From positions 124,001 through 188,000 of the IMG/VR virus record IMGVR_UViG_3300042934_000594: a stretch of 64,000 nucleotides of DNA; one strand, given 5' to 3'. The translations under genes and the position numbers were made by a program. Of the stretch, positions 3,100-46,221 are shown one piece after another (within the stretch, counting starts at the first letter, position 1; the number at the start of each line of letters is the position of its first letter). A model generated the notes under the pieces. The model searched no databases, was not told the origin of the DNA, and saw only the letters and a program-made list of their open reading frames with translations.

Positions 3100-4809
3100 A
3101 TGCCTCATGCCCGAATTCCCTTGCCGGATGTTTACGAATCCGTCATTCGACGCGTGGCGGTGGACGTCACCGCACAGTTGGCCCGTGTGATGAACCTGCC
3201 GGAGGAAACCCAAGTCTTCCTACCCGGTAACACCGATGTCGTCCCCATGAACGGTGGTACCTTTGGTGAGTGCTGCGTCAACCCTGTCAAGATGTCTTCC
3301 ACTGAACGGTTGAAAGTGACGTACCGTGAAGAGGCGGACGAATCGTTCACCCTGACCACCAACGTGAACAACAAGGAAATGCCCCCGTTGTTCATCGACC
3401 GGAACCTGGGGATTGACGTCCGGCAGATTGATCGCTTCGTGACCCTGACGGCTACGTTTGAATACACCGCCCCCAGCATTGTGATCGCCCAGCGCTGGAT
3501 CGATGACATGCGTAACCGGATCTCGATTGGTGGGGCTGAGCTGTACCAGACCTTGCATTACAACTACGCCATCCCCAAGCCATTGATGGTTTTACTCAAA
3601 GCGCTCTATGAGACGCAGGAGCGCTCGGCCTGGCCGACGGGTGCCACGTATGAGGAGTGGATCGCGGCACGCTTTACCGTACCGACGACCGTTCTGGCCA
3701 CCTTGGGCAATACCGACCAGACCCTGGCTGTACCCCAGCACCAGGAAGAGGTCCTGGGGTGGTTTGACTTTACGTCCACCCCAGAAGAGCCCGTCAAGGA
3801 CAGTGAAGGTACGGGGACCTACACCACCTCGTTCTCCTACCAACTGCGCTACGGGCGCCCCAACCAGGTGTATGTGCGGTTTCCCATGTTGGTGCACCAA
3901 CGCCCGATTCCGCGGTTGTTCCGGGACAAGGAACCGTATCAGACGTACATGGCCAAGACCCGTAAGGTCTCCACGACTAAAGGTAGCTTTGATCGGATGA
4001 TGGCCCTGATGCGGGCTAACGTCTTGCCGTACGTGCATTATCCCAACACCGATGACTTTGTAACGGATCGCATCCCGGCAGGGCGCTTGACGTTCTTCAC
4101 CGGGTTGATGATGCTCAAGCCTGATGACCTGCGCTCGGTGTGTGATTTGTCCAACCTGGGCGAGTACCGGTTTAACCCGTACTTCCTGGAGTACTTCTAC
4201 CACATGGGGGACAAGCTGTTTCGTCAGGACCAGTCCATCATTGAGTTTCGGCTCTATGAGAATGAAACCCTGCGCAGTGACATCCCTTTAACCATTATGC
4301 CCGGTACGGTACGGGTGGTGGCCAAAGTGGACTTGGACCCTACCAAGGTGTACCACGTGCAGATTTCATTGATCCGTAACTGGATGACCCTGACCCGTGA
4401 CACGTTGCAGTGCCTACGCCGCTACCCACATGTTCTCTACCACACCCTCAAAGCCTTGAACGTGAACTTAGGGGGTGCCGACGTCTACGGCAACCTTAAG
4501 CTGCTGGGTAAAGACAACCCCCGGCCGTACTCACCGGTCTGCCCGGGTGAAGGTTGGACCGTGGGTCCTTACGTCCCCGATCACCCTATCGGGGGACCGG
4601 GTCATGGTGGTGTGGTCGTGCCGGGGCAACCGTGGACCAACTTGGACAAACCCACCCGGGAAACGTTTGACAATTCCGGGGTGGTTAAAATCATTGACAT
4701 CGACAAGGCCGTTAAGGACACCGATGGGGTCGCACGCAGTGGTTGGCGCGCTGCACCTCTGACGGTCATGTACCTGGGCATCGTCACCTACATTCACAAA
4801 GAGGCCTGA
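3100..4809 (+). CDS. Virion structural protein (phiKZ gp98-like by synteny)
   Basis: ATG 3100 after a GGAG RBS; 569 aa; first gene of a tightly packed four-gene operon after the head-protein cluster. Confidence 0.55.
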   Translation: MPHARIPLPDVYESVIRRVAVDVTAQLARVMNLPEETQVFLPGNTDVVPMNGGTFGECCVNPVKMSSTERLKVTYREEADESFTLTTNVNNKEMPPLFIDRNLGIDVRQIDRFVTLTATFEYTAPSIVIAQRWIDDMRNRISIGGAELYQTLHYNYAIPKPLMVLLKALYETQERSAWPTGATYEEWIAARFTVPTTVLATLGNTDQTLAVPQHQEEVLGWFDFTSTPEEPVKDSEGTGTYTTSFSYQLRYGRPNQVYVRFPMLVHQRPIPRLFRDKEPYQTYMAKTRKVSTTKGSFDRMMALMRANVLPYVHYPNTDDFVTDRIPAGRLTFFTGLMMLKPDDLRSVCDLSNLGEYRFNPYFLEYFYHMGDKLFRQDQSIIEFRLYENETLRSDIPLTIMPGTVRVVAKVDLDPTKVYHVQISLIRNWMTLTRDTLQCLRRYPHVLYHTLKALNVNLGGADVYGNLKLLGKDNPRPYSPVCPGEGWTVGPYVPDHPIGGPGHGGVVVPGQPWTNLDKPTRETFDNSGVVKIIDIDKAVKDTDGVARSGWRAAPLTVMYLGIVTYIHKEA

Positions 4810-4810
4810 G

Positions 4811-6223
4811 ATGGACAACCCCCTGTTTGAAGAGATTGAAGACCTGCCGGCCCCACCGCCGCAGGAACAGATCAAGGTACACGCCTCACCCCCGGCGTAC
4901 CGGGGCATCACCATCGACACCAAGTACGTCCCGTCTTCGGCACTGTTGACTTGGATCGAAGGGTCGAACTGGACGGTGGACTACTACCAACAGTTGTTGA
5001 ACCGCGACACGGAGCCCACGCCTCAAGCGCTGCACCGGGACCCGATCCACCAGCAGTACCGCCTGCTGAAGAAGCTGAGCCTTAAGGTCACCAGCCCGTT
5101 GTCGTTCTCCCAAGACCCTCAAACGCGCCTGATGACTGCCACCGGTGCCGGGGTCACGTACCCTTTCATGGTGGCCAACGAAGGGGACATGTTCATCGCG
5201 GACATCGGCGATGGCCGTCCGGGTATCTTCACAATCACCCGCTCCACCCGGGCCACGTTGTTGATGGACTCGGTGTACAACGTGGAATGGACCATGGTGT
5301 GCCCATGGGACCAAGCCCGTCAGGACGACCTGGACCGCAAGACGCAGGAGAAGTACCACTACTCCGCGCAGTCTTTGTCCAGTGGGTGTGGTCCGTTCAT
5401 CACCGATCAAGACGTCAAGCGTCACGAAGACTACGGCAAGTTCTACAGCGAGATCATCAAGCGCTACTTCACGGACTTCTTCAGTCAGGAGCACAGCACG
5501 CTGTTGATGCCGGATCAATTGGTCAAGACCTACGATCACTTCGTCACCAAGGCTGTGCACCAGCTGTTCGACCTGAAGGACGATCTGCGTGTGCGCCGGA
5601 CACGGGTGCTTAACTGTGACGGTGAGAACGTCATGCAGCAGCCTACCGTGTGGGACGCCATCCTGCGCCGTGACCCTGCGCGTCTGTATGGATGTACGCA
5701 GAAGGCTAATCTTGTGTCGACCAACTATTTCAAAGGTCGCCCCACGTTACAAGCCATGGGTTACACCGGGATCTCGCGCATTGCGTACCCGGAAGACGCC
5801 CCGACGGACGTGGACAGCCAGTACGACCGGGAGAACACGCACCTGCCCATTGGCATCCCGTACCGTGAAGGCTTGCCCCGTCGTCCCCTGCCAGGGCCGT
5901 ACATGACCCAAGCCGAGCGCAGCCTACCGTTCTTTCGCCGGCTGCCTGATGACCTGTCTTCGGACATCCCGGCCTGGAAACTACCCCCGACGATTAAGCC
6001 GGTGGTCGTGGACAGCTACTACATGTTCAGTGAGGCCTTCTACACCCAGCAGCGACACCTGATGTCCAAGTTGGAGTTGTTGACCACCTCGCTGATCCTC
6101 AAAGAAGAAATGAACTACAGTCAGCTCGATGCCGTACTCGACAGTGTGTACGACTGGGATAACTTGGAACGTTTCTATTACCACCCTGTTGTTATTGCGC
6201 TGCTTAAGGCGGCGGTGAGGTAA
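4811..6223 (+). CDS. Virion structural protein (phiKZ gp99-like by synteny)
   Basis: 470-aa ORF starting 1 nt after the upstream stop. Confidence 0.55.
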   Translation: MDNPLFEEIEDLPAPPPQEQIKVHASPPAYRGITIDTKYVPSSALLTWIEGSNWTVDYYQQLLNRDTEPTPQALHRDPIHQQYRLLKKLSLKVTSPLSFSQDPQTRLMTATGAGVTYPFMVANEGDMFIADIGDGRPGIFTITRSTRATLLMDSVYNVEWTMVCPWDQARQDDLDRKTQEKYHYSAQSLSSGCGPFITDQDVKRHEDYGKFYSEIIKRYFTDFFSQEHSTLLMPDQLVKTYDHFVTKAVHQLFDLKDDLRVRRTRVLNCDGENVMQQPTVWDAILRRDPARLYGCTQKANLVSTNYFKGRPTLQAMGYTGISRIAYPEDAPTDVDSQYDRENTHLPIGIPYREGLPRRPLPGPYMTQAERSLPFFRRLPDDLSSDIPAWKLPPTIKPVVVDSYYMFSEAFYTQQRHLMSKLELLTTSLILKEEMNYSQLDAVLDSVYDWDNLERFYYHPVVIALLKAAVR

Positions 6224-6819: not shown

Positions 6820-8187
6820 ATGTCTACCGACGCTACGTTAATGTACAAGGAAGCCGACGCCATCCGTTTGGAAGGCGAGTCACGGGCTAACTATGGCATG
6901 TCCTGTCAACTGTTGGTCAAAGGGCAGTGGCTGAAACCCTACCGCCTGGACCTGTGGCACTTGCACCGCGATTACGTCAAAGGCTTTGGTGATGCGGTGG
7001 TCATCGAGATGATGATGGGCATGGGCACCTACACCTACCAGCTGATCCCCAACCGGGATGACTTGCAGGTGGAGTTGGTGTTTACTCCCATGGCGGAGAA
7101 CAGTGACAAGCAGCGTACCGACACCCGGGTGACGACAGTCCGCTTGCGGGCGATCCTGATGGAGCAGGACAACCAAGCGTTGGTTGGGCGGCACTCACAG
7201 GCCACTGACGAGGAAACGTTGAACCTGGCGAACTACAAGCAGGTGCAACTGCAACTGGTCAGTGAAGCCACGTATAAAGCTCGACTGCAATCGGTGGGTC
7301 GTGGGTTTCGTAAGATGTCCCCTATGGACGTCCTGCGTACGCTGCTGACTGAGTCGGTGGCCATGTTTGGGGGTAAAGATGCGGATCGAATCCAGGGCAT
7401 TGCCAGCATCTCCCCAGGGTTTAATACTGAGGTGCGCAATCAAATAGAAATCCCGCATGGCACGCGCCTGCCGGGCGTATGCGATTTACTTCAGAACAAG
7501 GAAGGCGGGTTGTACCCCACTGGGGCCGGTGCCTACCTTCAGGATAACTTCTGGTACATCTACTCGCTGTATGACACCGCGCAGTTCAAGAAGGCCAAGA
7601 AGACCCTGACCGTGCTCAACGTACCCAAGAACCGGTACTACGGCACAGAGCGTACGTACCGAGTGCAAGGGGATGCGTTGACGATCCTGGTAGCGGGTGA
7701 CGCCTCTGCCTTGGACACCTCGTTCATGGCCAAACTTAATGCCGGTAACGGCTTTCGAGTGGCAGACGCCCGTAAGCTCTTTGACTTTGGGATTGTCAAA
7801 GACAACAAGATGTTGATTGATCGGGCCACCAACGTGTTTGAGGTGGTGACTGACCAGATGAAGAATGGACTCAACAACGTTGCCTGGAGCGCTGATCGGG
7901 CCACCAGTAACCCGTACAAGCACTACACCGACCAGGCCGCCCGACAGGGACAGCAGGTTAAGGTGGAGTGGCAGCACGGGGACAGTGACTTGATTCTGCC
8001 CGGGATGCCAGTGAAGTTTCTGACCACGGACAAAGACCAACTGCGCACCTACTATGGGCGCGTCCACGAGGTTGATGAGCAGCGTGCTCCAGCGGAAGCC
8101 GGGGCCAATGCGTCACGCTACCCCGGTATGGTGACCCTGTCTCTGTTCCTGACCCCAAGTCAGGATCCGTTGGATCAGCCGACATAA
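6820..8187 (+). CDS. Virion tail protein, possible baseplate hub (phiKZ gp101-like)
   Basis: 455 aa; beta-rich N-half and a C-terminal barrel-like segment (QHGDSDLILPGMPVKF) reminiscent of gp27/GpD-type hubs; synteny. Confidence 0.45.
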   Translation: MSTDATLMYKEADAIRLEGESRANYGMSCQLLVKGQWLKPYRLDLWHLHRDYVKGFGDAVVIEMMMGMGTYTYQLIPNRDDLQVELVFTPMAENSDKQRTDTRVTTVRLRAILMEQDNQALVGRHSQATDEETLNLANYKQVQLQLVSEATYKARLQSVGRGFRKMSPMDVLRTLLTESVAMFGGKDADRIQGIASISPGFNTEVRNQIEIPHGTRLPGVCDLLQNKEGGLYPTGAGAYLQDNFWYIYSLYDTAQFKKAKKTLTVLNVPKNRYYGTERTYRVQGDALTILVAGDASALDTSFMAKLNAGNGFRVADARKLFDFGIVKDNKMLIDRATNVFEVVTDQMKNGLNNVAWSADRATSNPYKHYTDQAARQGQQVKVEWQHGDSDLILPGMPVKFLTTDKDQLRTYYGRVHEVDEQRAPAEAGANASRYPGMVTLSLFLTPSQDPLDQPT

Positions 8188-8189
8188 AC

Positions 8190-8215
8190 GACGCCCTTCG
8201 GGGCGTCCTCTATTT
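8190..8215 (+). terminator. Intrinsic terminator
   Basis: GACGCCC-TTCG-GGGCGTC with a UUCG tetraloop. Confidence 0.65.
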
Positions 8216-8227
8216 CTTAAGGTAGAT

Positions 8228-8626
8228 ATGAGCATTAGCCAAAATGTCTACCTGCCGGTAGATCCTTTGTGGGCGTACAACTTCATTGGGGCCGTGGAAG
8301 AGCACGGGCTCTTGGAGACGGACCAGATACGGGTGTGCTTGAGCCATGCCATGCAGTATTTGCAAGTGCGCCATAACTTCATCAGCGGTGCACAACGCGG
8401 TCAGAATGACCCAGTGACGTTTAACAACGCCATGCAGACGCTACAAAAGAAAGCCAGCTTCTTAGGGGAAGTACCCTTTGCCACATTTCAGTATTACTGG
8501 GAGGCCCTGTACCGCAGCCTACGGGTTCCCTTAAGCCATCTGCCGTATCCAATCATTGACACCCACGTGGTAGCCGATGAGAACGCAGACCTGAAAGGGA
8601 CTGTGGTGGAAGTGCGATTGCAGTGA
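8228..8626 (+). CDS. Hypothetical protein
   Basis: 132-aa ORF after an AAGGT RBS. Confidence 0.6.
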   Translation: MSISQNVYLPVDPLWAYNFIGAVEEHGLLETDQIRVCLSHAMQYLQVRHNFISGAQRGQNDPVTFNNAMQTLQKKASFLGEVPFATFQYYWEALYRSLRVPLSHLPYPIIDTHVVADENADLKGTVVEVRLQ

Positions 8627-8628
8627 AC

Positions 8629-8652
8629 TTGACACCTACATTACTGAGGTGA
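8629..8652 (+). promoter_or_regulatory. Putative early (virion RNAP) promoter, copy 1
   Basis: TTGACACC-TACATTAC-TGAG-GTGA; same spacing as copies at 9232, 11130 and 12370; core resembles the phiKZ early TATATTAC motif. Confidence 0.7.
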
Positions 8653-8670
8653 CTAACCTGGAGCTTGAAC

Positions 8671-8793
8671 ATGGACTTGAACCAACGTAACCCCATTCCC
8701 AAGTACCCCGCACCCTGGTGGAACGAAAAGCACCTGGCTGTGGTTTTTCTCATTGCACTGGTGGCTAGCGGCTGTCAGTTCGGCTGGACGTAG
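8671..8793 (+). CDS. Membrane micro-protein (40 aa)
   Basis: MDLNQRNPIPKYPAPWWNEKHLAVVFLIALVASGCQFGWT; GGAG RBS; below the ORF-track size cutoff. Confidence 0.55.
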   Translation: MDLNQRNPIPKYPAPWWNEKHLAVVFLIALVASGCQFGWT

Positions 8794-8801
8794 GAGGCTG
8801 T

Positions 8802-9182
8802 ATGGGTATTGCCTTTGGTGTGGTGTTGTTTATGATCTTCTGTGTGGGGATTGTGGCGCTGTATAAGCGCGCCTGCAACGTGTTAGAGCGCGCAGGCACC
8901 CTGAACCCGCTCAAGCGTAAAGAAGGGCAGCTAGCGCCTCTGGTGCGCTCGCTGGAACGAGAAGGGTTCTTTGCCGTCCCCTCCCGGGGTGGTCAAGGCC
9001 TGGTGTTGGTCACCAATGACTTCCTGTCAGAGATGGTGACCTTGGCGGCCAAAGAAAAGCGCTTCGCTTGGGAACTACCCCGCTACGAATTGGTGGTGCG
9101 AGAATTCCCTGAGTCGTCCACGTACAGCCATCAACTGTGTTCGCGCTCTCATGCGATTGGTTTTAACTGGCAGCATAACTGA
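8802..9182 (+). CDS. Hypothetical protein with N-terminal transmembrane helix
   Basis: AGGAGG RBS; MGIAFGVVLFMIFCVGIVALYKR. Confidence 0.65.
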   Translation: MGIAFGVVLFMIFCVGIVALYKRACNVLERAGTLNPLKRKEGQLAPLVRSLEREGFFAVPSRGGQGLVLVTNDFLSEMVTLAAKEKRFAWELPRYELVVREFPESSTYSHQLCSRSHAIGFNWQHN

Positions 9183-9210
9183 CGCTCCCCTGTGGGAGCG
9201 TTTATGCCGC
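9182..9210 (+). terminator. Hairpin followed by TTATGCCGC (repeated element)
   Basis: ACGCTCCC-CTGT-GGGAGCGT then TTATGCCGC. Confidence 0.6.
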
Positions 9211-9231
9211 ATTTAGTTGATTCCAAAATAT

Positions 9232-9255
9232 TTGAGACCTATATAGCTAGGGTGA
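9232..9255 (+). promoter_or_regulatory. Putative early promoter, copy 2
   Basis: TTGAGACC-TATATAGC-TAGG-GTGA, with AT-rich upstream sequence. Confidence 0.7.
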
Positions 9256-9300
9256 GAAGGAACAATGATGTTCCACTACACCATCCCTTTAGGAGGGAAT

Positions 9301-9486
9301 ATGTTTAGCTTTCTGACCATCAACAGCAACACTAGCAAAACTGAAGCCCTCCGTAAGGAGCGCATGCACACTGAACGCCTGTTCGCCCAGGCCATGCGCA
9401 TGTACGGCGTCAGCTCGTCCCAGGCTAAAAAGCACGACGAACACCTGACCAAACTGGAACGTCAGCTAGAAGCCCTCGCGGCCTAA
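9301..9486 (+). CDS. Small hypothetical protein (61 aa)
   Basis: AGGAGG RBS before ATG 9301. Confidence 0.6.
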   Translation: MFSFLTINSNTSKTEALRKERMHTERLFAQAMRMYGVSSSQAKKHDEHLTKLERQLEALAA

Positions 9487-9494
9487 GGAATCCC

Positions 9495-9653
9495 ATGCAA
9501 CTGTGCGACGAAATGAAAGACCAGATCAACGCCGACATCCAGCAAGCACAGGAAGAACACGGCGTCTTTACGGCGCTGGACGCACTGGCTGACAGCTTGG
9601 TCGATTTTTACACCCAGGGGCATACCAGCCCTACCGTACCTAATCAGGAGTAA
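9495..9653 (+). CDS. Small acidic hypothetical protein (52 aa)
   Basis: MQLCDEMKDQINADIQQAQEEHGVFTALDALADSLVDFYTQGHTSPTVPNQE; AAGGA RBS. Confidence 0.55.
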   Translation: MQLCDEMKDQINADIQQAQEEHGVFTALDALADSLVDFYTQGHTSPTVPNQE

Positions 9654-9657
9654 CACC

Positions 9658-9816
9658 ATGAACACTGAAAACGAAAAGCCGGAAGTGGACCAAGAAACCC
9701 AGGAAATGTTCGAAGCGATTGGCCATGGTCTCGCCTTGGGCGTGGCCTGCGCTGTACTGACCGTCGTCGGCCTGGTGGTCGGCGGTAAAATCAACGATGC
9801 AGTCCTGGGGCGCTAA
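9658..9816 (+). CDS. Membrane micro-protein (52 aa)
   Basis: MNTENEKPEVDQETQEMFEAIGHGLALGVACAVLTVVGLVVGGKINDAVLGR; AGGAG RBS. Confidence 0.6.
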   Translation: MNTENEKPEVDQETQEMFEAIGHGLALGVACAVLTVVGLVVGGKINDAVLGR

Positions 9817-9818
9817 TC

Positions 9819-9953
9819 ATGCAAGACGCAAAAGAAATCGCACTTGAGCTGGCTAAGTCAGCTGCCACCAACGCCGCTGCTGGCGTAGTCCTGGGCGCCG
9901 TTTGCGGCGTCTTCGTATTCACCTTCACCCTCATCGCCAACACTGGCAAGTAA
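9819..9953 (+). CDS. Membrane micro-protein (44 aa)
   Basis: MQDAKEIALELAKSAATNAAAGVVLGAVCGVFVFTFTLIANTGK. Confidence 0.55.
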   Translation: MQDAKEIALELAKSAATNAAAGVVLGAVCGVFVFTFTLIANTGK

Positions 9954-9965
9954 CACGGAGCTCTC

Positions 9966-10115
9966 ATGAACGACGACCAAAAGAAAGCAGAAAGCGAGCA
10001 ACACTGGGCGACTCACCTGACCTCCGCGTTCGTCGGCGGTGTGGTATTTGCCATCGGCTTCGGCCTGACGGTAGCGGCCTGCAAAGCAGCGGCGAACGCC
10101 ATCAACGGGAAATAA
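9966..10115 (+). CDS. Membrane micro-protein (49 aa)
   Basis: MNDDQKKAESEQHWATHLTSAFVGGVVFAIGFGLTVAACKAAANAINGK; GGAG RBS. Confidence 0.6.
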   Translation: MNDDQKKAESEQHWATHLTSAFVGGVVFAIGFGLTVAACKAAANAINGK

Positions 10116-10140
10116 ACTCCCGTGACCAATAGTACAAGTC

Positions 10141-10176
10141 GAGCTCCTTCGGGAGCTTGGCTGACTATTTCTTTTT
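10141..10176 (+). terminator. Intrinsic terminator
   Basis: GAGCTCC-TTCG-GGAGCTT stem with a downstream T-run. Confidence 0.55.
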
Positions 10177-10190
10177 TGGTGGGAGGTGCT

Positions 10191-10661
10191 ATGAGCAGTA
10201 CTGAAGTGAGCGACCGTACGGTGCTGATGGCCAATCGGCTATTGGGTTACAGTTGGCAAAAAGTCAATGACATCCCCAATGAGTTCCCACCGCTGGAGCA
10301 ATGGCTCCACCAGCTGTCTGAGTACCGCTACCCAGGCGCCGAGATCCTGGCGTGGCTGCAAGCCCTGGAACAACACAGTGTGGTTCTGGCCCAGCACTAC
10401 AAGGATCATATCCTGACCTTGCCCGATTACGACCAGCACACGGACTACCTCTGGACGATGACAGAGTTCTGTGAACAACAACCCGGTTTGCTGGATCTGC
10501 TAGGACAGCCCGACGTGGCTGCCCGATCCGACCTCTTCAAGCAATTGCTCACTCACCAGTACACCTACTCTGATCTGACGGTTGCTCAACTCGATTACGA
10601 GATCGGTGCTTTGACAGGCTGGCTGCATTACCTGCACCGTACAGACCTGCCCAAGGAGTAA
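10191..10661 (+). CDS. Hypothetical protein
   Basis: ATG 10191 after a GGAGG RBS; 156 aa, helical. Confidence 0.6.
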   Translation: MSSTEVSDRTVLMANRLLGYSWQKVNDIPNEFPPLEQWLHQLSEYRYPGAEILAWLQALEQHSVVLAQHYKDHILTLPDYDQHTDYLWTMTEFCEQQPGLLDLLGQPDVAARSDLFKQLLTHQYTYSDLTVAQLDYEIGALTGWLHYLHRTDLPKE

Positions 10662-10664
10662 GCC

Positions 10665-11144
10665 GTGACTGATTTCGTAGAGGGTTACAACATCTTCGGT
10701 GTAGAGGGTGACCTCTACGTCATCACGGTGAACCTGGTGGGTGTCATGGGCACGGGTGTGGCAGAAGCCTTTCGTGACCGTTACCGCGATCTGTACAACC
10801 TGTACCGCAAGGATTGTCGCAGTCGGGCACTGAAGATCGGACGCCCCCTGGTGTACCAGGCTGACGATGGTAAGCGCTTTATGATGTTCCCCACCAAGGA
10901 CAACTGGCGTAACCCCTCGCAGCTGCTATGGGTGTCACAGGGCCTTGAATGGATGGTGGACAACGCAGGCTCTGAATTTCCGGAGACTGACCACATTGTC
11001 ATGCCTCCATTGGGGTGCGGTAACGGTAAGTTGCATTGGCCGGTGGTCAAAGAAGCCATCCGTGAAGCCATGGACTGCCTGCCCAACCCGGTTACAGTGG
11101 TGGTACCCCCATGGTTGATTGAACAGGAATTGACGTCTATATAA
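10665..11144 (+). CDS. Macrodomain ADP-ribosylglycohydrolase, DarG/TARG1(Poa1p)-like
   Basis: Hallmark motifs VNLVGVMGTGVAEAFRDRY, FPTKDNWRNPS and PPLGCGNGKLHWPVVKEAI. Confidence 0.85.
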   Translation: MTDFVEGYNIFGVEGDLYVITVNLVGVMGTGVAEAFRDRYRDLYNLYRKDCRSRALKIGRPLVYQADDGKRFMMFPTKDNWRNPSQLLWVSQGLEWMVDNAGSEFPETDHIVMPPLGCGNGKLHWPVVKEAIREAMDCLPNPVTVVVPPWLIEQELTSI

Positions 11145-11153
11145 CTGCGGTGA
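11130..11153 (+). promoter_or_regulatory. Putative early promoter, copy 3
   Basis: TTGACGTC-TATATAAC-TGCG-GTGA, overlapping the macrodomain stop codon. Confidence 0.7.
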
Positions 11154-11181
11154 TCAATACCAGACCCTAAGGAGGTCCGCA

Positions 11182-11379
11182 GTGTCTAACGTGGTACAGT
11201 TTCCAGTGCTCAAACGTCTCGTCGGTCCTGAGACCGAAGTTTTCTTGGTAAGTCTGGCACGCTCCAGCGGCTTGCCGATCACCGCCCGCCAGTTACGCAC
11301 CATGGCGGAGAACTTCATTCGCGTCAACCAAGATTTGGCAGCCAGTGGCTTGCCAGCCCTGTTCGACCCCCGCGCGTAA
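11182..11379 (+). CDS. Small hypothetical protein
   Basis: AAGGAGG RBS, GTG start, 65 aa. Confidence 0.6.
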   Translation: MSNVVQFPVLKRLVGPETEVFLVSLARSSGLPITARQLRTMAENFIRVNQDLAASGLPALFDPRA

Positions 11380-11423
11380 GCGTGGGGTGCTATGCCCTTT
11401 TATACCCATTGAGGAGTAAGACC

Positions 11424-11717
11424 ATGCAAGACGATTATCGCCGTCGTTGGGAACAGGCCCAGGCCACCAAGCGTGAAGACGCCCGTAAAACCCGTGAGGC
11501 CATCGCCACAGTAAAACGTAAGTCAGCCGAGGTCGTTGACCCTGAGCTCATTGCTGAGCTGGAAGATTACGCGGTGTTCCTGTACGAGCTGACCATGCTG
11601 TACATGGCCCTGGCTAAAATCAATTCCACGATGCGGTTGTTCGCGGCAGCGTATGCCGTGCTGACCAAAGGCTCGTTCCTGTTACTTGAAGAGGCGTACA
11701 CCCATGTCCAACGGTAA
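11424..11717 (+). CDS. Hypothetical helical protein
   Basis: ATG 11424 after a GAGGAG RBS; 97 aa. Confidence 0.6.
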   Translation: MQDDYRRRWEQAQATKREDARKTREAIATVKRKSAEVVDPELIAELEDYAVFLYELTMLYMALAKINSTMRLFAAAYAVLTKGSFLLLEEAYTHVQR

Positions 11718-12309
11718 AGAATACACCTTCAATGAGTTCTTCGGCCTCGACGAGGATACGCGTTTCGAGATCGTCCCTGAATCGAACGTGCTCGAAGGGG
11801 AACTGCTAGACCCCACTCCCATTGACCGCATGCATGAACACCTCAAGCGTTACCACAAGGGTAAACGCCTGAGTCCAAATGCCACGCTGATCACCTTCGA
11901 TTCGATCTCCCAACTCGACATCGAAGGTGAGGTCGTCTCACCCAAGGCAATGTTGGAAGGGGGTCCTATCGAGGATCTGATATTTCCCTTGTGTGGTCCC
12001 GAAGCCTTGGCGCGGGTGCCTCGCCTGATAGCCATCCTGGGTGCCGGTGGCATGCAGTACCACAGGCCTAAAGTACGTTCTGGTGAAGGGGCGATCCCAC
12101 TCAATTTCGACCCTCATGGGATAACCCGAAACAACCTGTGTCCAGAGATCCCCGAGGAGAATCTTCAGGAGATAAGGCACGCGTACAAACTCACCGACCA
12201 GCACGGTGGGATGGGTGTGGCTGTAGAAGTCAAGCCTGATCCTCAACCGATTCGCCCGGTGTCGCTAGGGGATATCCTGCGTAAACTCACAGACCGCCCC
12301 AAGTCGTAA
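11704..12309 (+). CDS. Hypothetical protein
   Basis: ATG 11704 overlaps the end of the upstream gene; 201 aa. Confidence 0.6.
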   Translation: MSNGKEYTFNEFFGLDEDTRFEIVPESNVLEGELLDPTPIDRMHEHLKRYHKGKRLSPNATLITFDSISQLDIEGEVVSPKAMLEGGPIEDLIFPLCGPEALARVPRLIAILGAGGMQYHRPKVRSGEGAIPLNFDPHGITRNNLCPEIPEENLQEIRHAYKLTDQHGGMGVAVEVKPDPQPIRPVSLGDILRKLTDRPKS

Positions 12310-12313
12310 TAAA

Positions 12314-12348
12314 GCCCCTCCCTTCGGGGAGGGGTGTTATGCCTTTTT
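12314..12348 (+). terminator. Hairpin followed by TTATGCC and a T-run
   Basis: GCCCCTCCC-TTCG-GGGAGGGGT-GTTATGCCTTTTT. Confidence 0.75.
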
Positions 12349-12369
12349 CTTTCGTTGATCCCACTGAAT

Positions 12370-12393
12370 TTGAAACCTATATGACACAAGTGA
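12370..12393 (+). promoter_or_regulatory. Putative early promoter, copy 4
   Basis: TTGAAACC-TATATGAC-ACAA-GTGA. Confidence 0.7.
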
Positions 12394-12439
12394 GCAATAC
12401 CAATCCTGGTTTGCCATTATACCCAAAAGGGGCAACAAC

Positions 12440-12790
12440 ATGAACAAAGACTTCAAAGATCTGGTCGTAGGCACTGTGGTGGGTTTGGTCGTCGTCGGTG
12501 GCCTGGTGGCAATCGCTACCTGGTCGGAAAACAAGATCGCTGATGAGCGTATCGACATCGCCATGGCCAAGTTGGAAAACATCATCGCCAACGTCAAGTC
12601 CCGTCAACCTTCCCCGGGTGACGTCGGTTCTTTGATGACTTGGAGAACCCAAGCTGAAATGGCCGGCATGAAGATCTATCTGGACGTGGTTCTGGGGGTC
12701 CCTTCGCACAAGGCTGAAGAGTTCCGCAGTCGCTGGACTCGCCGCTTGGATGAACTGGCTGCTGAACAGAAAGCGGCGCAAGCGGCGTGA
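12440..12790 (+). CDS. Single-pass membrane protein
   Basis: N-terminal TM segment LVVGTVVGLVVVGGLVAIATW followed by a helical domain. Confidence 0.65.
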   Translation: MNKDFKDLVVGTVVGLVVVGGLVAIATWSENKIADERIDIAMAKLENIIANVKSRQPSPGDVGSLMTWRTQAEMAGMKIYLDVVLGVPSHKAEEFRSRWTRRLDELAAEQKAAQAA

Positions 12791-13056
12791 TCCTGGTATT
12801 TCTCGGGAGCATGCTTGCCACCTTCCTGCTCTCCTTTGTCAAAGCGTTCCAGACGATGAACTTTATCAAGCGTCATCGTCTGTCGGCCGTCATCACCTCC
12901 TGGGGGATTAGCACCCTGGAGATCTCCACCGTCACTTTCACAGTGATGGGTGGGTGGGCCATGATCATCCCCGCCGGTATCGGTGGGTCTGTCGGCGTCC
13001 TGGTGGCCATGACCTTTCATGACCGCGTCTTTAAACCTTCTGCAACTAAGCCCTAA
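12787..13056 (+). CDS. Small multi-pass membrane protein
   Basis: 89 aa with three hydrophobic segments; GTGA overlap with the upstream stop. Confidence 0.6.
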   Translation: MILVFLGSMLATFLLSFVKAFQTMNFIKRHRLSAVITSWGISTLEISTVTFTVMGGWAMIIPAGIGGSVGVLVAMTFHDRVFKPSATKP

Positions 13057-13068
13057 CGGAGCACACCC

Positions 13069-13236
13069 ATGAATTCGAAGAACCTGAAAACTGTACTCGT
13101 TGGCCTGATCATGGGTGCCTCCCTGGCAGCTGTGGCGTCCAACCACGAAACCCCACGCACCGAATCGCACGAACCGGTGGTCATCGGTCACCGCGTGACC
13201 CCGCAAGGCGATTTCCAACTGGTCTATTCCAAGTAA
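13069..13236 (+). CDS. Micro-protein with signal peptide or anchor (55 aa)
   Basis: MNSKNLKTVLVGLIMGASLAAVASNHETPRTESHEPVVIGHRVTPQGDFQLVYSK; GGAG RBS. Confidence 0.6.
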   Translation: MNSKNLKTVLVGLIMGASLAAVASNHETPRTESHEPVVIGHRVTPQGDFQLVYSK

Positions 13237-13308
13237 GGGAATACTCCATGCGCATATATATGCAGGCATTCGTCCTGAAGGCCTGCTTTACTGCCAAGGA
13301 GTAATACA

Positions 13309-13737
13309 ATGGCCGATCCCGAAAACACCCAGCCAGCTGTAGATTCCCGCCCAACGCCAGAAGAGACCGGTGCGCATATTCCTGAGAATACGCCTGCCAC
13401 TCATGAAGACCCTGCTGCTGTACCAGCAGGTCATCCGAAACACTCGCGTGAGTTGGAGCCGAATGTGGCCCCAGCTGATCAGGTAACCCAAGCCCCAGGC
13501 GTCGGTCCGATTCCGAATGCTCCGGGCAACCCTGACGAGCCACTGCGCCGTGAAGACCGTGAAGCAATTCCCGGTACTGACGTCGGTGGTCTTGAAGACA
13601 ACGGTGCGACCGTTGACGGCAATGACAACCTCGACCAAGAGCGCCGTGAAGACGTTCTGGAAGAAGATGCCCGCCGTGAACGCGAAGGCGAACCTGAAGA
13701 TCCAACGGCACCAGCCGCCGCTGATCGCCAGGTGTAA
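13309..13737 (+). CDS. Acidic, Pro-rich, probably disordered protein
   Basis: AAGGAG RBS; 142 aa with no aromatic residues; biased codons. Confidence 0.7.
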   Translation: MADPENTQPAVDSRPTPEETGAHIPENTPATHEDPAAVPAGHPKHSRELEPNVAPADQVTQAPGVGPIPNAPGNPDEPLRREDREAIPGTDVGGLEDNGATVDGNDNLDQERREDVLEEDARREREGEPEDPTAPAAADRQV

Positions 13738-13747
13738 GCAGTAAATG

Positions 13748-13777
13748 AGCGGTCCCTTCGGGGACCGCTTTTATGCC
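13748..13777 (+). terminator. Hairpin followed by TTTATGCC
   Basis: AGCGGTCCC-TTCG-GGGACCGCT-TTTATGCC. Confidence 0.75.
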
Positions 13778-13792
13778 CTCACGAGGTTAACC

Positions 13793-13867
13793 ATGAAAAA
13801 TATCTTAATTGGTGCTGCCGTGGTGGCAGCGCTTATGCTCTTGGCCCAATACCTGGAAGAAAACTGA
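13793..13867 (+). CDS. Membrane micro-peptide (24 aa)
   Basis: MKNILIGAAVVAALMLLAQYLEEN; GAGG RBS. Confidence 0.45.
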   Translation: MKNILIGAAVVAALMLLAQYLEEN

Positions 13868-13868
13868 T

Positions 13869-14186
13869 ATGACCCCCCTCCGTCGTCAAGCCCATGTGGC
13901 ATCCCCTCTGCTCAAAGAAAACTTTCGCAGCCTGGTGTGTGAGGCCTTCCGGGGTTTCATGCACCTGTGGAGAACCCAAGACCCGGTGACCACCACCGTG
14001 GTGTTGCCTCTCACCCTGGCTGAATTCCAGGAGCTGGGACTGCCGTACATCGCCAATGTCATCAGCGGTCATGTCGAACGTAACCGGGAAGGCCGGATGC
14101 GCTTTGCCTGGAAGATCCAGTGGCCCCATGCAAAGACCACTGCTGACCCGGCTTACAAGCTGGTGTTTAAAATCGAGTTGATCTAA
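13869..14186 (+). CDS. Hypothetical protein
   Basis: ATG 13869, 1 nt after the micro-peptide stop; 105 aa. Confidence 0.55.
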   Translation: MTPLRRQAHVASPLLKENFRSLVCEAFRGFMHLWRTQDPVTTTVVLPLTLAEFQELGLPYIANVISGHVERNREGRMRFAWKIQWPHAKTTADPAYKLVFKIELI

Positions 14187-14220
14187 CTCACCCCCCTCAT
14201 ACCCAAAGTGGAGTAACACC

Positions 14221-14340
14221 ATGTCTGATTTCCTGAAAGAAGTAGCCATCCGCGTCACTGTTACCTTGGTCGTCACCGCTGTTGTGATCGGCACCATGGA
14301 ATACATCAACCGTCCTAAAGAAGAGAAGCGCCATGCGTAA
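14221..14340 (+). CDS. Membrane micro-protein (39 aa)
   Basis: MSDFLKEVAIRVTVTLVVTAVVIGTMEYINRPKEEKRHA; GGAG RBS. Confidence 0.6.
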   Translation: MSDFLKEVAIRVTVTLVVTAVVIGTMEYINRPKEEKRHA

Positions 14341-14650
14341 GCAAAAGTTCTACTTCGGGCAGCGTCGCCTCAAGCACAACGACGGTCACAGTCGGGCCAC
14401 CTACCAATGGGTGGTTCCACGGATTCTGCGCCCGTACTTCGAACGCCAGATCCGTCGTCAGATGGAAAACGTCAGTCTCAAACTGGCTATGAATAGCAGC
14501 TGGGGTGCTCGAGGCGCGCACAACCCCAACGCGGTCTATGGCTCGATGCAGCCTGAGCGTCCGCAGATCACCATCACCCAAGACTTCCTGCAAGAGCAAT
14601 TGCAGAAACGTCGCGACATCAAACAGCACTACCGTTCTGGTAAGTGGTAA
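14333..14650 (+). CDS. Small basic hypothetical protein
   Basis: 105 aa, Arg/Lys/Gln-rich; overlaps the upstream stop. Confidence 0.6.
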   Translation: MRKQKFYFGQRRLKHNDGHSRATYQWVVPRILRPYFERQIRRQMENVSLKLAMNSSWGARGAHNPNAVYGSMQPERPQITITQDFLQEQLQKRRDIKQHYRSGKW

Positions 14651-14652: not shown

Positions 14653-14692
14653 ATGACCCGCCCTTCGGGGCGGGATCATATGCATTCTTTTT
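14653..14692 (+). terminator. Hairpin followed by CATATGC and a T-run
   Basis: CCCGCCC-TTCG-GGGCGGG-ATCATATGCATTCTTTTTT. Confidence 0.7.
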
Positions 14693-14750: not shown

Positions 14751-15932
14751 ATGTCGAAAGTAGAACAGCATCTGCGTGCGTCGCAAGAAGAGCACCAGGA
14801 AGAAGCAGTAGAAGGCGAAGTGGTCCAGAACGAATGGATCGAGTTGCCCCAGGACACCATGGCCGACGTTTACGAAGGCGAGCAGACCAAGGAAGCGCTG
14901 GACCAGTTGGCGGACAAAGTCGATGCCGGTGACGACAAGGTGGTTGACCAGGTAGCCCTGGAAAACTTCAACTGGACGTTCAAGACCCTGACCCGTCTGA
15001 CCAACCTGACGCCGAAAACCTTCCCGGCGCTGGAAGACTACACCCACGACGCCCCGTTGCAGCGTAAAGTCCTGAGTGGTGCGATCCGCGCTCACTCTGA
15101 CCGTCTGGCCCGTGCCATCAATTTCGGCCTGGAAGACTACACCGAGTCGTTCGGCAACAACCTGCAACAGCTGGTTGAGAGCATGAAGAGCTCCCAGGCT
15201 GATCTGAATCGTTCGCTCGGTCGCATCAACGGTCTGCCCAGCAAAACCGTCAAAGTCAACCATGCCAAAATCTGGGCGATGCTGCACGTCAATGGTCGTT
15301 TCGTCAAAGACCTGGACGGGGCGATCACCGATGAGCAACGTCACCTGCGCGAACTGCTGACCGTGGCCAAAAATGCTGCGGCTGAAGTTGCCAAGATGGC
15401 CAAAGAAACTGAAGCGCCTTCAGCTGAAGGCGTGGAAGCGGCGATGAACCGTGGCGGTGACGTTGAACTGATGTTCAACACCAGCGTGTCGTTTTCCGGT
15501 GGTCAGGTTGACTTCCAGCGTAACTCCCCACCTTCCCCGAAAACCGAGAAGGTAGGCAGCGACTACCTGCGTGGCGCAGCGTGGGGCACCCTGTTCGGCT
15601 TCCTGCTGCTGGGCCCTGCGTTCCTGTTGGGTACTGTGATCGGCGCCGTGGGTTCCTCGGCCACTGGCAGCACCTCGGCCAGCAAGCGTGACGTGGACGG
15701 CGTGAAGAGCTTCCTGCAAGACCTGGGCGGCTTTGCCAAACTGGCGGCTGATATCGAAAGCATTGCTGAATCGCTGAACGATTCCGTCAAAGCCTCGACG
15801 GCTCACGGCGCTGTTGTCAAGCGTGCAGCGGCCCCAGTGATGGAACTGATGTCTGGCATCGCCAAGCACGTAGCCGAACTGTGCTATGGTGGCGCCAACA
15901 TGGCTTCGGCCCTGTCGACTGCTTCCAAGTAA
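14751..15932 (+). CDS. Inner head protein with acidic propeptide and a hydrophobic segment
   Basis: Glu-rich N-terminus with QVALENF, PALEDY and FGLEDY cleavage-type motifs; highly biased codons; hydrophobic stretch GAAWGTLFGFLLLGPAFLLGTVIGAVG. Confidence 0.65.
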   Translation: MSKVEQHLRASQEEHQEEAVEGEVVQNEWIELPQDTMADVYEGEQTKEALDQLADKVDAGDDKVVDQVALENFNWTFKTLTRLTNLTPKTFPALEDYTHDAPLQRKVLSGAIRAHSDRLARAINFGLEDYTESFGNNLQQLVESMKSSQADLNRSLGRINGLPSKTVKVNHAKIWAMLHVNGRFVKDLDGAITDEQRHLRELLTVAKNAAAEVAKMAKETEAPSAEGVEAAMNRGGDVELMFNTSVSFSGGQVDFQRNSPPSPKTEKVGSDYLRGAAWGTLFGFLLLGPAFLLGTVIGAVGSSATGSTSASKRDVDGVKSFLQDLGGFAKLAADIESIAESLNDSVKASTAHGAVVKRAAAPVMELMSGIAKHVAELCYGGANMASALSTASK

Positions 15933-15939: not shown

Positions 15940-15969
15940 GCCCTCCCTTCGGGGAGGGCTGTATGCCGT
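15940..15969 (+). terminator. Hairpin followed by TATGCCGT
   Basis: GCCCTCCC-TTCG-GGGAGGGC-TGTATGCCGT. Confidence 0.7.
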
Positions 15970-16013
15970 TCTTTCTTTTTGGCATGGTATGCACCACCAC
16001 TGAGGACTGTACA

Positions 16014-16334
16014 ATGTCCATCAAGCTCTCCCCTGTCCTGCGTCAGATGAACGAGTACACTGTGTACTTCTGGTGCCCGGCGTGTTTGATGATTCACCCC
16101 GTCTATCTCGATCTTCCGAAAAACCCACGTCCCTATAAGAACGACCGTTGGATGTGGAATGGTGACGCAGCAAGCCCTACGTTCAGTCCTAGCCTCGTTG
16201 TACAGGGACCCCGTGGCTTATGTCACAGTTACGTGCGAAACGGCCAGATGGAGTTCCTAGGCGATTGTGGGCATCCTCTTAAGGGGCAAACGGTCCTGAT
16301 CCCTGACTTCCCCGAAGATGAGGACCTGTTCTAG
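16014..16334 (+). CDS. DUF6527-like Cys/His (Zn-binding) protein
   Basis: ATG 16014 after a GAGGA RBS; pattern CPAC..IH...W.WNGD..SPTFSPS...CHSYVRNGQMEFLGDCGHPLKGQTV. Confidence 0.7.
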   Translation: MSIKLSPVLRQMNEYTVYFWCPACLMIHPVYLDLPKNPRPYKNDRWMWNGDAASPTFSPSLVVQGPRGLCHSYVRNGQMEFLGDCGHPLKGQTVLIPDFPEDEDLF

Positions 16335-45160: not shown

Positions 45161-45203
45161 ATTTGTTACTCCTAGGGTGGGTGTTGCATTAAGTGAGGTT
45201 GTG

Positions 45204-45575
45204 TTATTGAGGAATGTCGCGTGCGATCTGCTCGGCCACTGCGGCTGCAACGTCAAAGCTCTCAAGCTCCTCCGATGACGACAGCCGGTGGATAATGTCA
45301 GCCACACGTTGCTCAGCACGGATGCATCGTTCCAGGTAACTTCCGACCCCATACACGTAGGTCGCAATATTGGCAGCGTTCAGTACGATCGTCTCTTTCC
45401 CACTCCACCAGTCCAGACTGGGTGGGGCATTCTCACGCATGAGAACTTGATGAGCCGACAGCAGGTTGGCGTACGTGCCCTGATTAACGTTGAGAAGATG
45501 TCCTTCAACGGTGACCGAATGGGTGAGTGCTTCGAGTTCACCCATCAGGCCGACAATGCATCTATCCACGCTCAC
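45204..45575 (-). CDS. DUF4376-like fibre chaperone
   Basis: 123 aa; AEQRVADII..LSSSEELESFDV tail similar to 37977-38633. Confidence 0.45.
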   Translation of the reverse strand: MSVDRCIVGLMGELEALTHSVTVEGHLLNVNQGTYANLLSAHQVLMRENAPPSLDWWSGKETIVLNAANIATYVYGVGSYLERCIRAEQRVADIIHRLSSSEELESFDVAAAVAEQIARDIPQ

Positions 45576-45578
45576 TCC

Positions 45579-46127: not shown

Positions 46128-46182
46128 GAGGGCCTCGGGGACTGGTTTAAAAAGTGAGTCCACATAGCATATCAATTCGAGG

Positions 46183-46221
46183 CGGCATAACGCCCTTCCC
46201 GTCAGGGAGGGGCGTATGTCG
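46183..46221. terminator. Hairpin flanked by CGGCATA and TATGTCG
   Basis: ACGCCCTTCCC-GTCA-GGGAGGGGCGT. Confidence 0.7.

What the first reader, a model, noticed from the sequence alone, without database searches (positions are those of the whole stretch)
8671..14340. Early island packed with unannotated membrane micro-proteins
Seen: at least eight ORFs of 24-55 aa, most with a clear RBS and all but one with a single hydrophobic helix, missing from the ORF track (8671, 9495, 9658, 9819, 9966, 13069, 13793, 14221). Three are consecutive, with Gly/Ala-rich TM segments, and three larger membrane proteins (8802, 12440, 12787) lie among them. All are downstream of the early promoter motif. Inference: an inner-membrane remodelling set. 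Possible roles are superinfection exclusion, inhibition of membrane-acting defence effectors, or building the early phage infection vesicle known in nucleus-forming phages.
Basis: partly seen in the sequence, partly recalled or inferred. Interest (0 to 1): 0.6.

Follow-up and report, generated by a model that had tools for sequence, protein, structure and literature searches.

The report
Early island of phage membrane micro-proteins
An uncultured soil jumbo phage related to phiKZ carries a 6-kb early-transcribed block of real but tiny inner-membrane protein genes; related phages have the same kind of block at the same place, and nobody has tested what it does.

Summary
All eight micro-ORFs (24-55 aa) are at the stated coordinates. 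Seven have one hydrophobic helix and seven have a Shine-Dalgarno. Codon usage is gene-like, and such ORFs do not arise by chance in this genome (0 of 552 off-frame controls). Seven of the genome's nine small membrane genes lie here.

A 98.4%-identical soil variant shows purifying selection: 43 synonymous against 5 nonsynonymous changes in the region, and 5 against 2 in the micro-ORFs.

The "early" label is supported. A motif found about 24 times in the genome, including upstream of the ChmA and non-virion RNA polymerase homologs, occurs four times in the island.

Related phages (Noxifer, PA1C/PS119XW, Psa21, RVTF4, D6) have annotated islands at the same position, and 8-19 of their 17-30 genes are membrane proteins.

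Homologs exist for 8671, 13069, 8802 and 12787, and weakly for 14221. The Gly/Ala trio, 9495, 13793 and 12440 are orphans.

Function is untested. An accessory role at the cell envelope (superinfection exclusion, defence evasion or lysis timing) fits best. Building the early infection vesicle is unlikely.

The parts
8625..8650 (+). Early-promoter motif copy 1 (score 29.6). It overlaps the stop codon of gene 8228-8626 and lies 21 nt upstream of ORF 8671.
   Evidence: Weight-matrix scan. The same motif precedes the ChmA and non-virion RNA polymerase homologs.
8671..8793 (+). Micro-ORF, 40 aa, with a C-terminal helix. It belongs to a conserved family that sits directly after the 8228 family in PS119XW, RVTF4, D6, Psa21 and L023.
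   Evidence: (profile E 2.9e-5). It has the weakest codon score of the set (0.14).
8802..9182 (+). Membrane protein of 126 aa: an N-terminal helix followed by a soluble domain of about 100 aa, predicted to be cytoplasmic.
   Evidence: Homologs: Noxifer gp102 (E 1.4e-8) and L022, L033, L039.
9183..9200 (+). GC-rich terminator hairpin that ends the first small operon.
   Evidence: Read from the sequence. Same class of hairpin as.
9228..9253 (+). Early-promoter motif copy 2 (score 30.6).
9265..9486 (+). Soluble ORF of 61-73 aa (start at 9265 or 9301); first gene of the second operon.
9495..9653 (+). Micro-ORF, 52 aa, acidic, with no hydrophobic helix; orphan.
   Evidence: (0.35 per codon).
9658..9816 (+). 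Micro-ORF, 52 aa: acidic N-tail, Gly/Ala-rich helix with GxxxG motifs, short basic C-tail; orphan.
   Evidence: 0.41 per codon. The word search finds only itself. One conservative change (V49I) in the variant strain.
9819..9953 (+). Micro-ORF, 44 aa, with a glycine-zipper helix (GxxxGxxxG). No Shine-Dalgarno; it starts 2 nt after the previous stop codon.
   Evidence: In the variant: 2 synonymous changes and 1 conservative change (A19T).
9966..10115 (+). Micro-ORF, 49 aa, with a Gly/Ala-rich helix and a basic C-tail; orphan.
   Evidence: (2 synonymous, 0 nonsynonymous).
10137..10162 (+). Terminator-like hairpin after the trio.
10665..11144 (+). DarG-like macrodomain protein, the conserved non-membrane anchor gene of the island.
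11126..11151 (+). Early-promoter motif copy 3 (score 27.0).
12315..12334 (.). Bidirectional terminator hairpin.
12366..12391 (+). Early-promoter motif copy 4 (score 34.1).
12440..12790 (+). Membrane protein of 116 aa: an N-terminal helix followed by a helical domain predicted to be periplasmic. Its stop overlaps the start of 12787 (GTGA). Sequence orphan.
   Evidence: The exhaustive search of 1.84 billion representatives finds only itself.
12787..13056 (+). Three-helix membrane protein, 89 aa, of family phrog_7045 (labelled 'holin').
   Evidence: searches (E 5.7e-14; 44-49% identity to Noxifer, PA1C and KTN4-type phages), and (AlphaFold2, pLDDT 83.5, three helices).
13069..13236 (+). Micro-ORF, 55 aa: a signal-peptide-like N-terminus followed by a conserved C-terminal motif (GHR-x-x-P-x-G...LV); family phrog_15989.
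   Evidence: (E 1.1e-8).
13748..13769 (+). Terminator hairpin.
13793..13867 (+). Micro-ORF, 24 aa, that is almost entirely one helix. JGI calls a 40-aa form from 13745 whose first codons lie inside the hairpin.
   Evidence: (0.39 per codon).
14221..14340 (+). Micro-ORF, 39 aa, one helix. Weak homolog in PS119XW gp121.
   Evidence: (E 0.002).

Best explanation
The stretch is the membrane-protein part of a fast-evolving accessory gene island. The island sits at a fixed place in Pseudomonas-type nucleus-forming jumbo phages, between the virion structural block and the DnaB-like helicase and major capsid genes.

Shown here:
- The micro-ORFs are genuine genes under purifying selection.
- The island carries four copies of the phage promoter motif that also precedes the ChmA and non-virion RNA polymerase genes.
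- The genes form short operons bounded by hairpin terminators.

Inferred:
- The injected virion RNA polymerase transcribes them in the first minutes of infection.
- Host ribosomes make the proteins, and they insert into the host inner membrane.
- The acidic-head, basic-tail trio probably inserts N-terminus out through YidC, as the Pf3 coat protein does. ORF 13069 probably goes through Sec and exposes its conserved C-terminal motif to the periplasm.
- The proteins act on envelope-level targets that matter only in some hosts or in competition: blocking entry by a second phage, blunting membrane-acting abortive-infection effectors, or tuning lysis timing.
- The 12440-12787-13069 operon pairs a class-I-holin-like three-helix protein with a periplasm-facing peptide, and it is the best candidate for a working module.

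My confidence that these are real, early, membrane-protein genes is about 0.85. My confidence in the accessory envelope role, as opposed to an essential replication step, is about 0.45.
For: Real genes:
- Codon statistics and the chance control.
- Coding density of the island.
- Independent gene calls by JGI.
- Variant strain: 43 synonymous against 5 nonsynonymous changes (pN/pS 0.03). In the five micro-ORFs it covers: 5 against 2, with no indels. The 82-nt intergenic gap at 9183-9264 alone holds 8 changes.

Early expression:
- The motif has about 24 sites, all on the + strand and nearly all intergenic, most of them within 80 nt upstream of a gene start. Simulated genomes give 0-3 sites.
- It lies upstream of the homologs of phiKZ gp54 (ChmA), gp68 and gp71/73 (non-virion RNA polymerase). 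Those polymerase genes must be read by the injected polymerase (PMC7598289).

Fixed island that turns over fast:
- The same gene order is seen in Noxifer, PS119XW, Psa21, RVTF4, D6 and L022.
- Membrane proteins make up 8-19 of 17-30 genes in those islands.
- Only the 8228, 8671, 8802, macrodomain, 12787 and 13069 families are shared.

Accessory role:
- The PS119XW island shares genes with phiKZ gp12-gp23, including the immediate-early ribosome binder gp14 (PMC10914614).
- phiKZ orf1-20 are non-essential (PMC12676376).
- The 12787 homolog is present in KTN4-type strains but absent from the phiKZ reference.
- A DarG-like macrodomain, a likely counter-defence gene, sits in the island.

Gene pair: the 12787 and 13069 families co-occur in every lineage examined and are adjacent or within about 500 nt in most.
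Against: - There is no RNA or protein evidence. The phage is known only from soil metagenomes, and no RNA run holds it.
- Timing rests on a motif, not on mapped transcript starts.
- ORFs 13793 and 14221 have no strong promoter copy.
- The selection test for the micro-ORFs rests on 7 substitutions, and the second half of the island is identical in the variant.
- Five of the eight micro-proteins have no detectable relative, so their conservation cannot be shown.
- No tool result links any of them to exclusion, defence or lysis.
- Family scans gave no significant hit for most of them, and none beyond the 'holin' label.
Confidence: 0.5

Rival explanations
1. A second, early or auxiliary lysis-control module. 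ORF 12787 would be a class-I holin or antiholin. ORF 12440 would be a spanin-like or regulator-like bitopic protein with a periplasmic helical domain. ORF 13069 would be a periplasmic antiholin-like peptide, as RI is in T4. Together they would set lysis timing or lysis inhibition. The other micro-proteins would be unrelated passengers.
For: - ORF 12787 matches phrog_7045 'holin'.
- Its model has three helices, and the charge distribution suggests N-terminus out and C-terminus in, as in lambda S105 (inference).
- Its homolog in Stappia phage SI01 overlaps a muramidase gene.
- The 12787/13069 pair is conserved.
- phiKZ may have a lysis-inhibition system whose parts are unknown (PMC12894885).
Against: - The same window holds a complete phiKZ-type lysis cassette (homologs of gp141, gp141.1, gp142 holin, gp143 and an endolysin) at 44312-47436 on the minus strand. 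gp142 is the proven phiKZ holin.
- The operon has an early promoter, whereas holins are late genes.
- The family is missing from the phiKZ reference.
- ORF 13069 has no lipobox cysteine, so it is not an o-spanin.
- The 'holin' label is untested. Structural neighbours are uncharacterised proteins and DUF5698.
Confidence: 0.2
2. The micro-proteins are components of, or channels in, the early phage infection vesicle. They would insert after translation into its cytosol-facing membrane to allow nucleotide import, mRNA export or genome hand-over to the phage nucleus.
For: - They are early and membrane-targeted.
- Several have glycine-zipper helices of the kind that form oligomers (sequence).
- Reviews state that the vesicle's channels are unidentified (PMC12908238).
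Against: - The vesicle is a family-wide trait, but these proteins are lineage-specific orphans.
- The phiKZ counterpart region is poor in membrane proteins and non-essential.
- The vesicle is seen within minutes of injection and is already transcribing before new phage proteins can act on it (the timing relative to protein synthesis is my inference).
- Affinity purification in phiKZ found host membrane proteins and soluble phage proteins at the vesicle. The passages I read name no phage membrane protein.
Confidence: 0.07
3. Some of the smallest ORFs (8671, 13793, perhaps 9819) are not translated. They would be hydrophobic-looking frames in leader or spacer RNA, and only the conserved ones would be genes.
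For: - ORF 8671 has a marginal codon score.
- ORF 13793 is only 24 aa, and callers disagree on its start.
- ORF 9819 has no Shine-Dalgarno, and Logan's caller skipped it.
Against: - ORF 8671 has syntenic homologs in at least five lineages.
- ORFs 13793 and 9819 have gene-like codon scores of 0.39 and 0.28.
- No off-frame control combines a helix, a Shine-Dalgarno and gene-like codon usage.
- ORF 9819 keeps its frame in the variant strain.
Confidence: 0.1

Closest known systems
Small-gene islands at the same position in Pseudomonas jumbo phages Noxifer, PS119XW/PA1C, Psa21, RVTF4 and D6, which overlap the phiKZ gp12-gp23 region
   Same: - Same position, after the virion structural block and before the DnaB-like helicase and major capsid genes.
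- Same strand and tight packing.
- Many single-helix proteins of 38-130 aa.
- Shared families: 8228, 8671, 8802, macrodomain, 12787 and 13069.
   Different: - Most individual micro-proteins are not shared.
- The window has no homolog of the ribosome binder gp14.
- The order of the 12787 and 13069 genes is reversed relative to RVTF4, D6 and Psa21.
- All of these genes are annotated only as hypothetical, so nothing about function carries over.
T4 Imm and Sp, early small inner-membrane proteins that exclude superinfecting phage (recalled from general knowledge)
   Same: Small size, one or two helices, made early, and not needed for growth in the laboratory.
   Different: No sequence similarity: the PHROGs scans return no exclusion family. 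No functional test. The resemblance is in kind only.
phrog_7045 'holin' family and class-I holins such as lambda S105
   Same: ORF 12787 matches the family at E 5.7e-14 and has three predicted helices. One member lies next to a muramidase gene.
   Different: - Here it has an early promoter and no endolysin neighbour.
- A canonical holin is present elsewhere in the window.
- Holin activity has not been shown for any member that I could find.
Pf3 and M13 coat-type small membrane proteins inserted by YidC (recalled from general knowledge)
   Same: The trio 9658, 9819 and 9966 share the layout: an acidic N-tail, one helix and a short basic C-tail, at 44-52 aa.
   Different: No sequence similarity, and this phage is not filamentous. 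The parallel concerns only the likely route of insertion.

Membership tests
phrog_7045 ('holin') | Profile match across the whole protein | tested here: met
   ORF 12787: E 5.7e-14, residues 3-81 against profile positions 5-86 of 94. A profile of six relatives gives E 1.3e-28.
phrog_7045 ('holin') | Holin context: late expression next to an endolysin or spanins | tested here: not met
   It follows an early-promoter motif. Its neighbours are 12440 and 13069. The lysis cassette is at 44312-47436 on the minus strand.
phrog_7045 ('holin') | Timed, energy-poison-triggered membrane lethality that releases endolysin | not testable with these tools
   This needs complementation of a holin-defective lambda, as was done for phiKZ gp142.
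phrog_15989 (unknown function) | Profile match plus the conserved C-terminal G-H/T-R-x-x-P-x-G...L-V motif | tested here: met
   ORF 13069: E 1.1e-8. Invariant residues G40, R42, P45, G47, L51 and V52 across 14 sequences.
Two-component spanins | A bitopic inner-membrane protein with a periplasmic coiled coil, plus an adjacent or embedded outer-membrane lipoprotein with a lipobox cysteine | tested here: not met
   ORF 12440 has the first architecture, judged only by hydropathy and charge. ORF 13069 has no cysteine, and neither does any nearby small ORF. The true spanin homologs lie elsewhere.
Known superinfection-exclusion proteins (T4 Imm/Sp type) | Sequence or profile similarity to a characterised exclusion protein | tested here: not met
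   PHROGs, Pfam and NCBIfam scans gave no such family for any island protein.
Jumbo-phage early (virion RNA polymerase) genes | Preceded by the phage's own conserved AT-rich motif that also precedes the non-virion RNA polymerase and ChmA genes | tested here: met
   Four copies with scores of 27-34 at 8625, 9228, 11126 and 12366. The same motif precedes the homologs of gp54, gp68 and gp71/73.
Jumbo-phage early (virion RNA polymerase) genes | Transcripts present within minutes and independent of protein synthesis | not testable with these tools
   No RNA run holds this phage.

The most novel reading that the evidence does not exclude
One or more of the glycine-zipper micro-proteins (9658, 9819, 9966) assemble into small pores in the early infection vesicle or the inner membrane. 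These pores would be the so far unidentified route for nucleotide import or transcript export during the vesicle stage. Each phage lineage would use its own fast-evolving version.
Probability: 0.05. Interest if true: 0.85.

Novelty: new member of a known kind. Interest (0 to 1): 0.4.

Why it matters
Nucleus-forming jumbo phages are studied for how they hide their DNA. Much less is known about what they do to the host envelope in the first minutes.

This work shows that a block of early small membrane proteins is a recurring feature at a fixed position in Pseudomonas-type members of the group. It turns over quickly, as counter-defence and competition genes do. It also contains one conserved pair (the 12787 and 13069 families) that is present in cultured phages.

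That gives a concrete, testable gene set for superinfection exclusion, escape from membrane-acting abortive-infection systems, or lysis inhibition. For this particular window the result is mostly confirmatory and descriptive.

Tried and rejected
- Near-identical DNA in the phage collection: none.
- Single-protein searches of viral and metagenome contigs for close relatives: none. An alignment query found only relatives at 50% identity or less.
- Paralogy of the trio: pairwise scores do not exceed locally shuffled controls.
- A hand-seeded profile linking the trio to tail-anchored ORFs in L022 and L023: non-seed hits were no better than reversed-sequence decoys, so I make no homology claim.
- TTATGCC as a late promoter: rejected. 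It is the outer arm of bidirectional terminator hairpins.
- A phiKZ gp14 homolog in the island: none.
- The 12787 homolog in the phiKZ reference genome: none.
- Complex prediction for 12787 with 13069: no answer, and it counts neither for nor against binding.
- Protein-atlas look-alikes for 9966 and 12440: only scores below the reliable range.
- Fold search with the 12787 model: uncharacterised viral proteins and DUF5698. This is too short a fold to carry weight.
- Consensus sigma-70 promoter scan of the island: fewer hits than in shuffles.
- RNA evidence: no RNA run holds the sequence.

Full report
**What the window is**

The window is bases 124001-188000 of a 269,430-bp virus contig from a soil metagenome. 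Its GC content is about 56%.

The 455-aa protein just upstream of the finding (6820-8187) is 40-44% identical to a virion protein of Pseudomonas jumbo phages RVTF4, D6, PA1C and the phiKZ group. The genome also encodes homologs of these phiKZ genes:
- the nuclear shell protein ChmA;
- all non-virion RNA polymerase subunits;
- PicA.

It is therefore a nucleus-forming (chimalli-type) jumbo phage. It has no close sequenced relative: the nearest contig in the viral collection is 50% identical in that structural protein.

**Checking the observation**

All eight micro-ORFs are present with the stated starts, at lengths of 24-55 aa.
- Seven carry one hydrophobic segment; 9495 does not.
- Seven have a Shine-Dalgarno of at least four bases. 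ORF 9819 has none and starts two bases after the stop of 9658.
- The three larger membrane proteins are also present. ORF 12787 folds as a three-helix bundle (pLDDT 83.5).

I trained a codon model on 110 long ORFs of this genome.
- Seven of the eight micro-ORFs score 0.28-0.41 per codon. Real-gene segments average 0.275 and off-frame small ORFs average -0.195.
- ORF 8671 is marginal at 0.14.
- Among 552 off-frame small ORFs, none combines a helix, a Shine-Dalgarno and gene-like codons.

A simple genome-wide gene call finds only nine membrane genes of 60 aa or less, and seven of them are in this stretch. Without the micro-ORFs the island would be 73.5% coding. With them it is 90%, close to the genome's 93%.

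**Selection**

A 98.4%-identical variant of the phage occurs in other soil samples (locus L044 and runs X3 and X4).
- Over 7456-11012 it differs by 43 synonymous and 5 nonsynonymous changes in the called frames, giving pN/pS of 0.03.
- The five micro-ORFs it covers have 5 synonymous and 2 conservative nonsynonymous changes, with no indel.
- One 82-nt intergenic gap alone has 8 changes.
- With about 77% of sites nonsynonymous, 2 or fewer of 7 has a binomial probability of about 0.009 by my own arithmetic.
- The numbers are small, and the variant is identical from 11445 to 14400, so nothing can be said there.

**"Unannotated"**

JGI's gene calls on the source contig already list ORFs of 40, 52, 52, 44, 49, 55, 40 (a longer form of 13793) and 39 aa.

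**Timing**

A long motif recurs in the genome. Its core reads T-T-G-A-R-A-C-C-T-A-T-A-T followed by A-C-T-C-A-G-G-T.
- A weight matrix finds about 24 strong sites. All are on the + strand, nearly all are intergenic, and most lie within 80 nt upstream of a gene start.
- Simulated genomes give 0-3 weak hits.
- Sites lie directly upstream of the homologs of ChmA and of the non-virion polymerase subunits gp68 and gp71/73.
- The non-virion polymerase cannot transcribe its own genes at the start of infection. Each jumbo phage is known to have its own AT-rich early motif near position -10 (PMC7598289). I therefore take this motif to be the early promoter.
- Four copies lie in the island, starting at 8625, 9228, 11126 and 12366. 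They precede six of the eight micro-ORFs.
- Hairpin terminators divide the island into short operons.
- ORFs 13793 and 14221 follow a terminator and have only a weak motif copy.
- The conserved TTATGCC next to the hairpins is the outer arm of bidirectional terminators, not a promoter.

**Comparison with relatives**

The order [quoted passage not shown] is the same in Noxifer and PS119XW. The start of the island, directly after the structural block, is the same in Psa21, RVTF4, D6 and the nearest metagenomic relative L022.

Their islands are annotated and rich in membrane proteins:

| Phage | Membrane proteins / island genes |
|---|---|
| RVTF4 | 19 / 28 |
| D6 | 16 / 28 |
| PS119XW | 16 / 30 |
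| Psa21 | 17 / 29 |
| Noxifer | 8 / 17 |
| phiKZ gp12-gp23 | 3 / 13 |

Sequence families shared with the window:
- the 8228 family;
- the 8671 family, found directly after it in at least five lineages;
- 8802;
- the macrodomain protein;
- 12787 (phrog_7045);
- 13069 (phrog_15989).

ORF 14221 has one weak match (E 0.002). The trio 9658, 9819 and 9966, together with 9495, 13793 and 12440, have no detectable relatives. A word search for 9658 and an exhaustive search for 12440 return only the proteins themselves. L022 has two Gly/Ala-rich tail-anchored ORFs at the trio's position, but I could not show homology above decoy level.

The PS119XW island also shares genes with phiKZ gp12-gp23, including gp14, an immediate-early ribosome binder (PMC10914614). 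phiKZ orf1-20 fall in a contiguous non-essential region (PMC12676376).

**The 'holin' label**

ORF 12787 matches a PHROG family labelled holin. One podophage homolog overlaps a muramidase gene.

However, the proven phiKZ holin is gp142, which lies in a cassette with spanins, a regulator and the endolysin (PMC12894885). This window contains homologs of that whole cassette at 44312-47436 on the minus strand.

The 12787 family is present in KTN4-type phiKZ strains, in a four-gene insertion, and absent from the phiKZ reference. It is therefore dispensable there. Its structural neighbours are uncharacterised.

The 12787 and 13069 families travel together in every lineage examined and are usually adjacent. 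This is the best evidence for a functional module. A complex prediction gave no answer.

**Interpretation**

Shown:
- real genes;
- clustering far beyond chance;
- purifying selection, tested on limited data;
- a shared early-type promoter;
- a conserved island position with rapid gene turnover.

Inferred:
- early synthesis;
- insertion into the inner membrane;
- an accessory role at the envelope.

The DarG-like macrodomain gene in the island and the non-essential status of the phiKZ counterpart fit a competition or defence role. A lysis-timing role for the 12440-12787-13069 operon is a serious rival.

A role in building the early infection vesicle is unlikely. The vesicle is described as being constructed rapidly from injected phage proteins and host material, and I infer that this precedes any new phage protein synthesis. 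It is also a family-wide structure, whereas these proteins are lineage-specific.

**Verdict**

This is a correct and careful observation of a real feature. The feature is already visible as "hypothetical proteins" in related annotated genomes, and its function remains open.

Noticed in passing
window 10665-11144 (+): A macrodomain protein matches the DarG antitoxin DNA ADP-ribosyl glycohydrolase model over its macrodomain half (E 4.6e-39, below the full-length cut-off). It is 48% identical to its counterparts in RVTF4 and D6, with homologs in the other relatives' islands. It is a likely early counter-defence enzyme against DNA ADP-ribosylation.
   Followed up: partly
window 44312-47436 (-): A complete phiKZ-type lysis cassette: homologs of i-spanin gp141, o-spanin gp141.1, holin gp142, lysis regulator gp143 and an endolysin related to gp144.
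   Followed up: partly
genome-wide; in the window at 8625, 9228, 11126, 12366 and 20979: A phage-specific promoter motif with about 24 copies, all on the + strand. It lies upstream of the ChmA and non-virion RNA polymerase homologs. A subset also has a TTGAT element 17 nt upstream of the TATAT, which looks like a sigma-70 -35 box.
   Followed up: yes
genome-wide; in the window at 8190-8207, 12315-12334, 14657-14674, 16343 and others: The terminators are GC-rich hairpins (typically GCCCCTCCC...GGGAGGGGC) flanked by inverted GGCATA / TTATGCC arms. They are often usable on both strands. About 49 intergenic copies.
   Followed up: partly
window 8600-14400 in runs X3 and X4, and locus L044: A co-occurring variant strain differs at 35 positions between 8766 and 11444 and at none between 11445 and 14400. 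This suggests recent recombination between strains within the island.
   Followed up: partly
window 14751-15932 (+): A 393-aa island protein with a glycine-zipper membrane segment near residue 280 (weak DUF1269 match). It is strongly conserved in the nearest relative, L022 6398-7531 (E 6e-90), but is not a phiKZ gp14 homolog.
   Followed up: partly
window 15963-16334 (+): The last gene of the island carries a precomputed Pfam BubE (PF20137) hit in JGI's table. NCBIfam gave nothing.
   Followed up: no
locus L016 (KTN4) 4615-5738 compared with locus L013 (phiKZ): KTN4/PA7-type phiKZ strains carry four extra small genes between gp19 and gp20, including the 12787 homolog. The phiKZ reference lacks them.
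   Followed up: partly
window 13309-13737 (+): A 142-aa proline-rich and very acidic protein with no family match. Its composition suggests a disordered protein or a nucleic-acid mimic.
   Followed up: no
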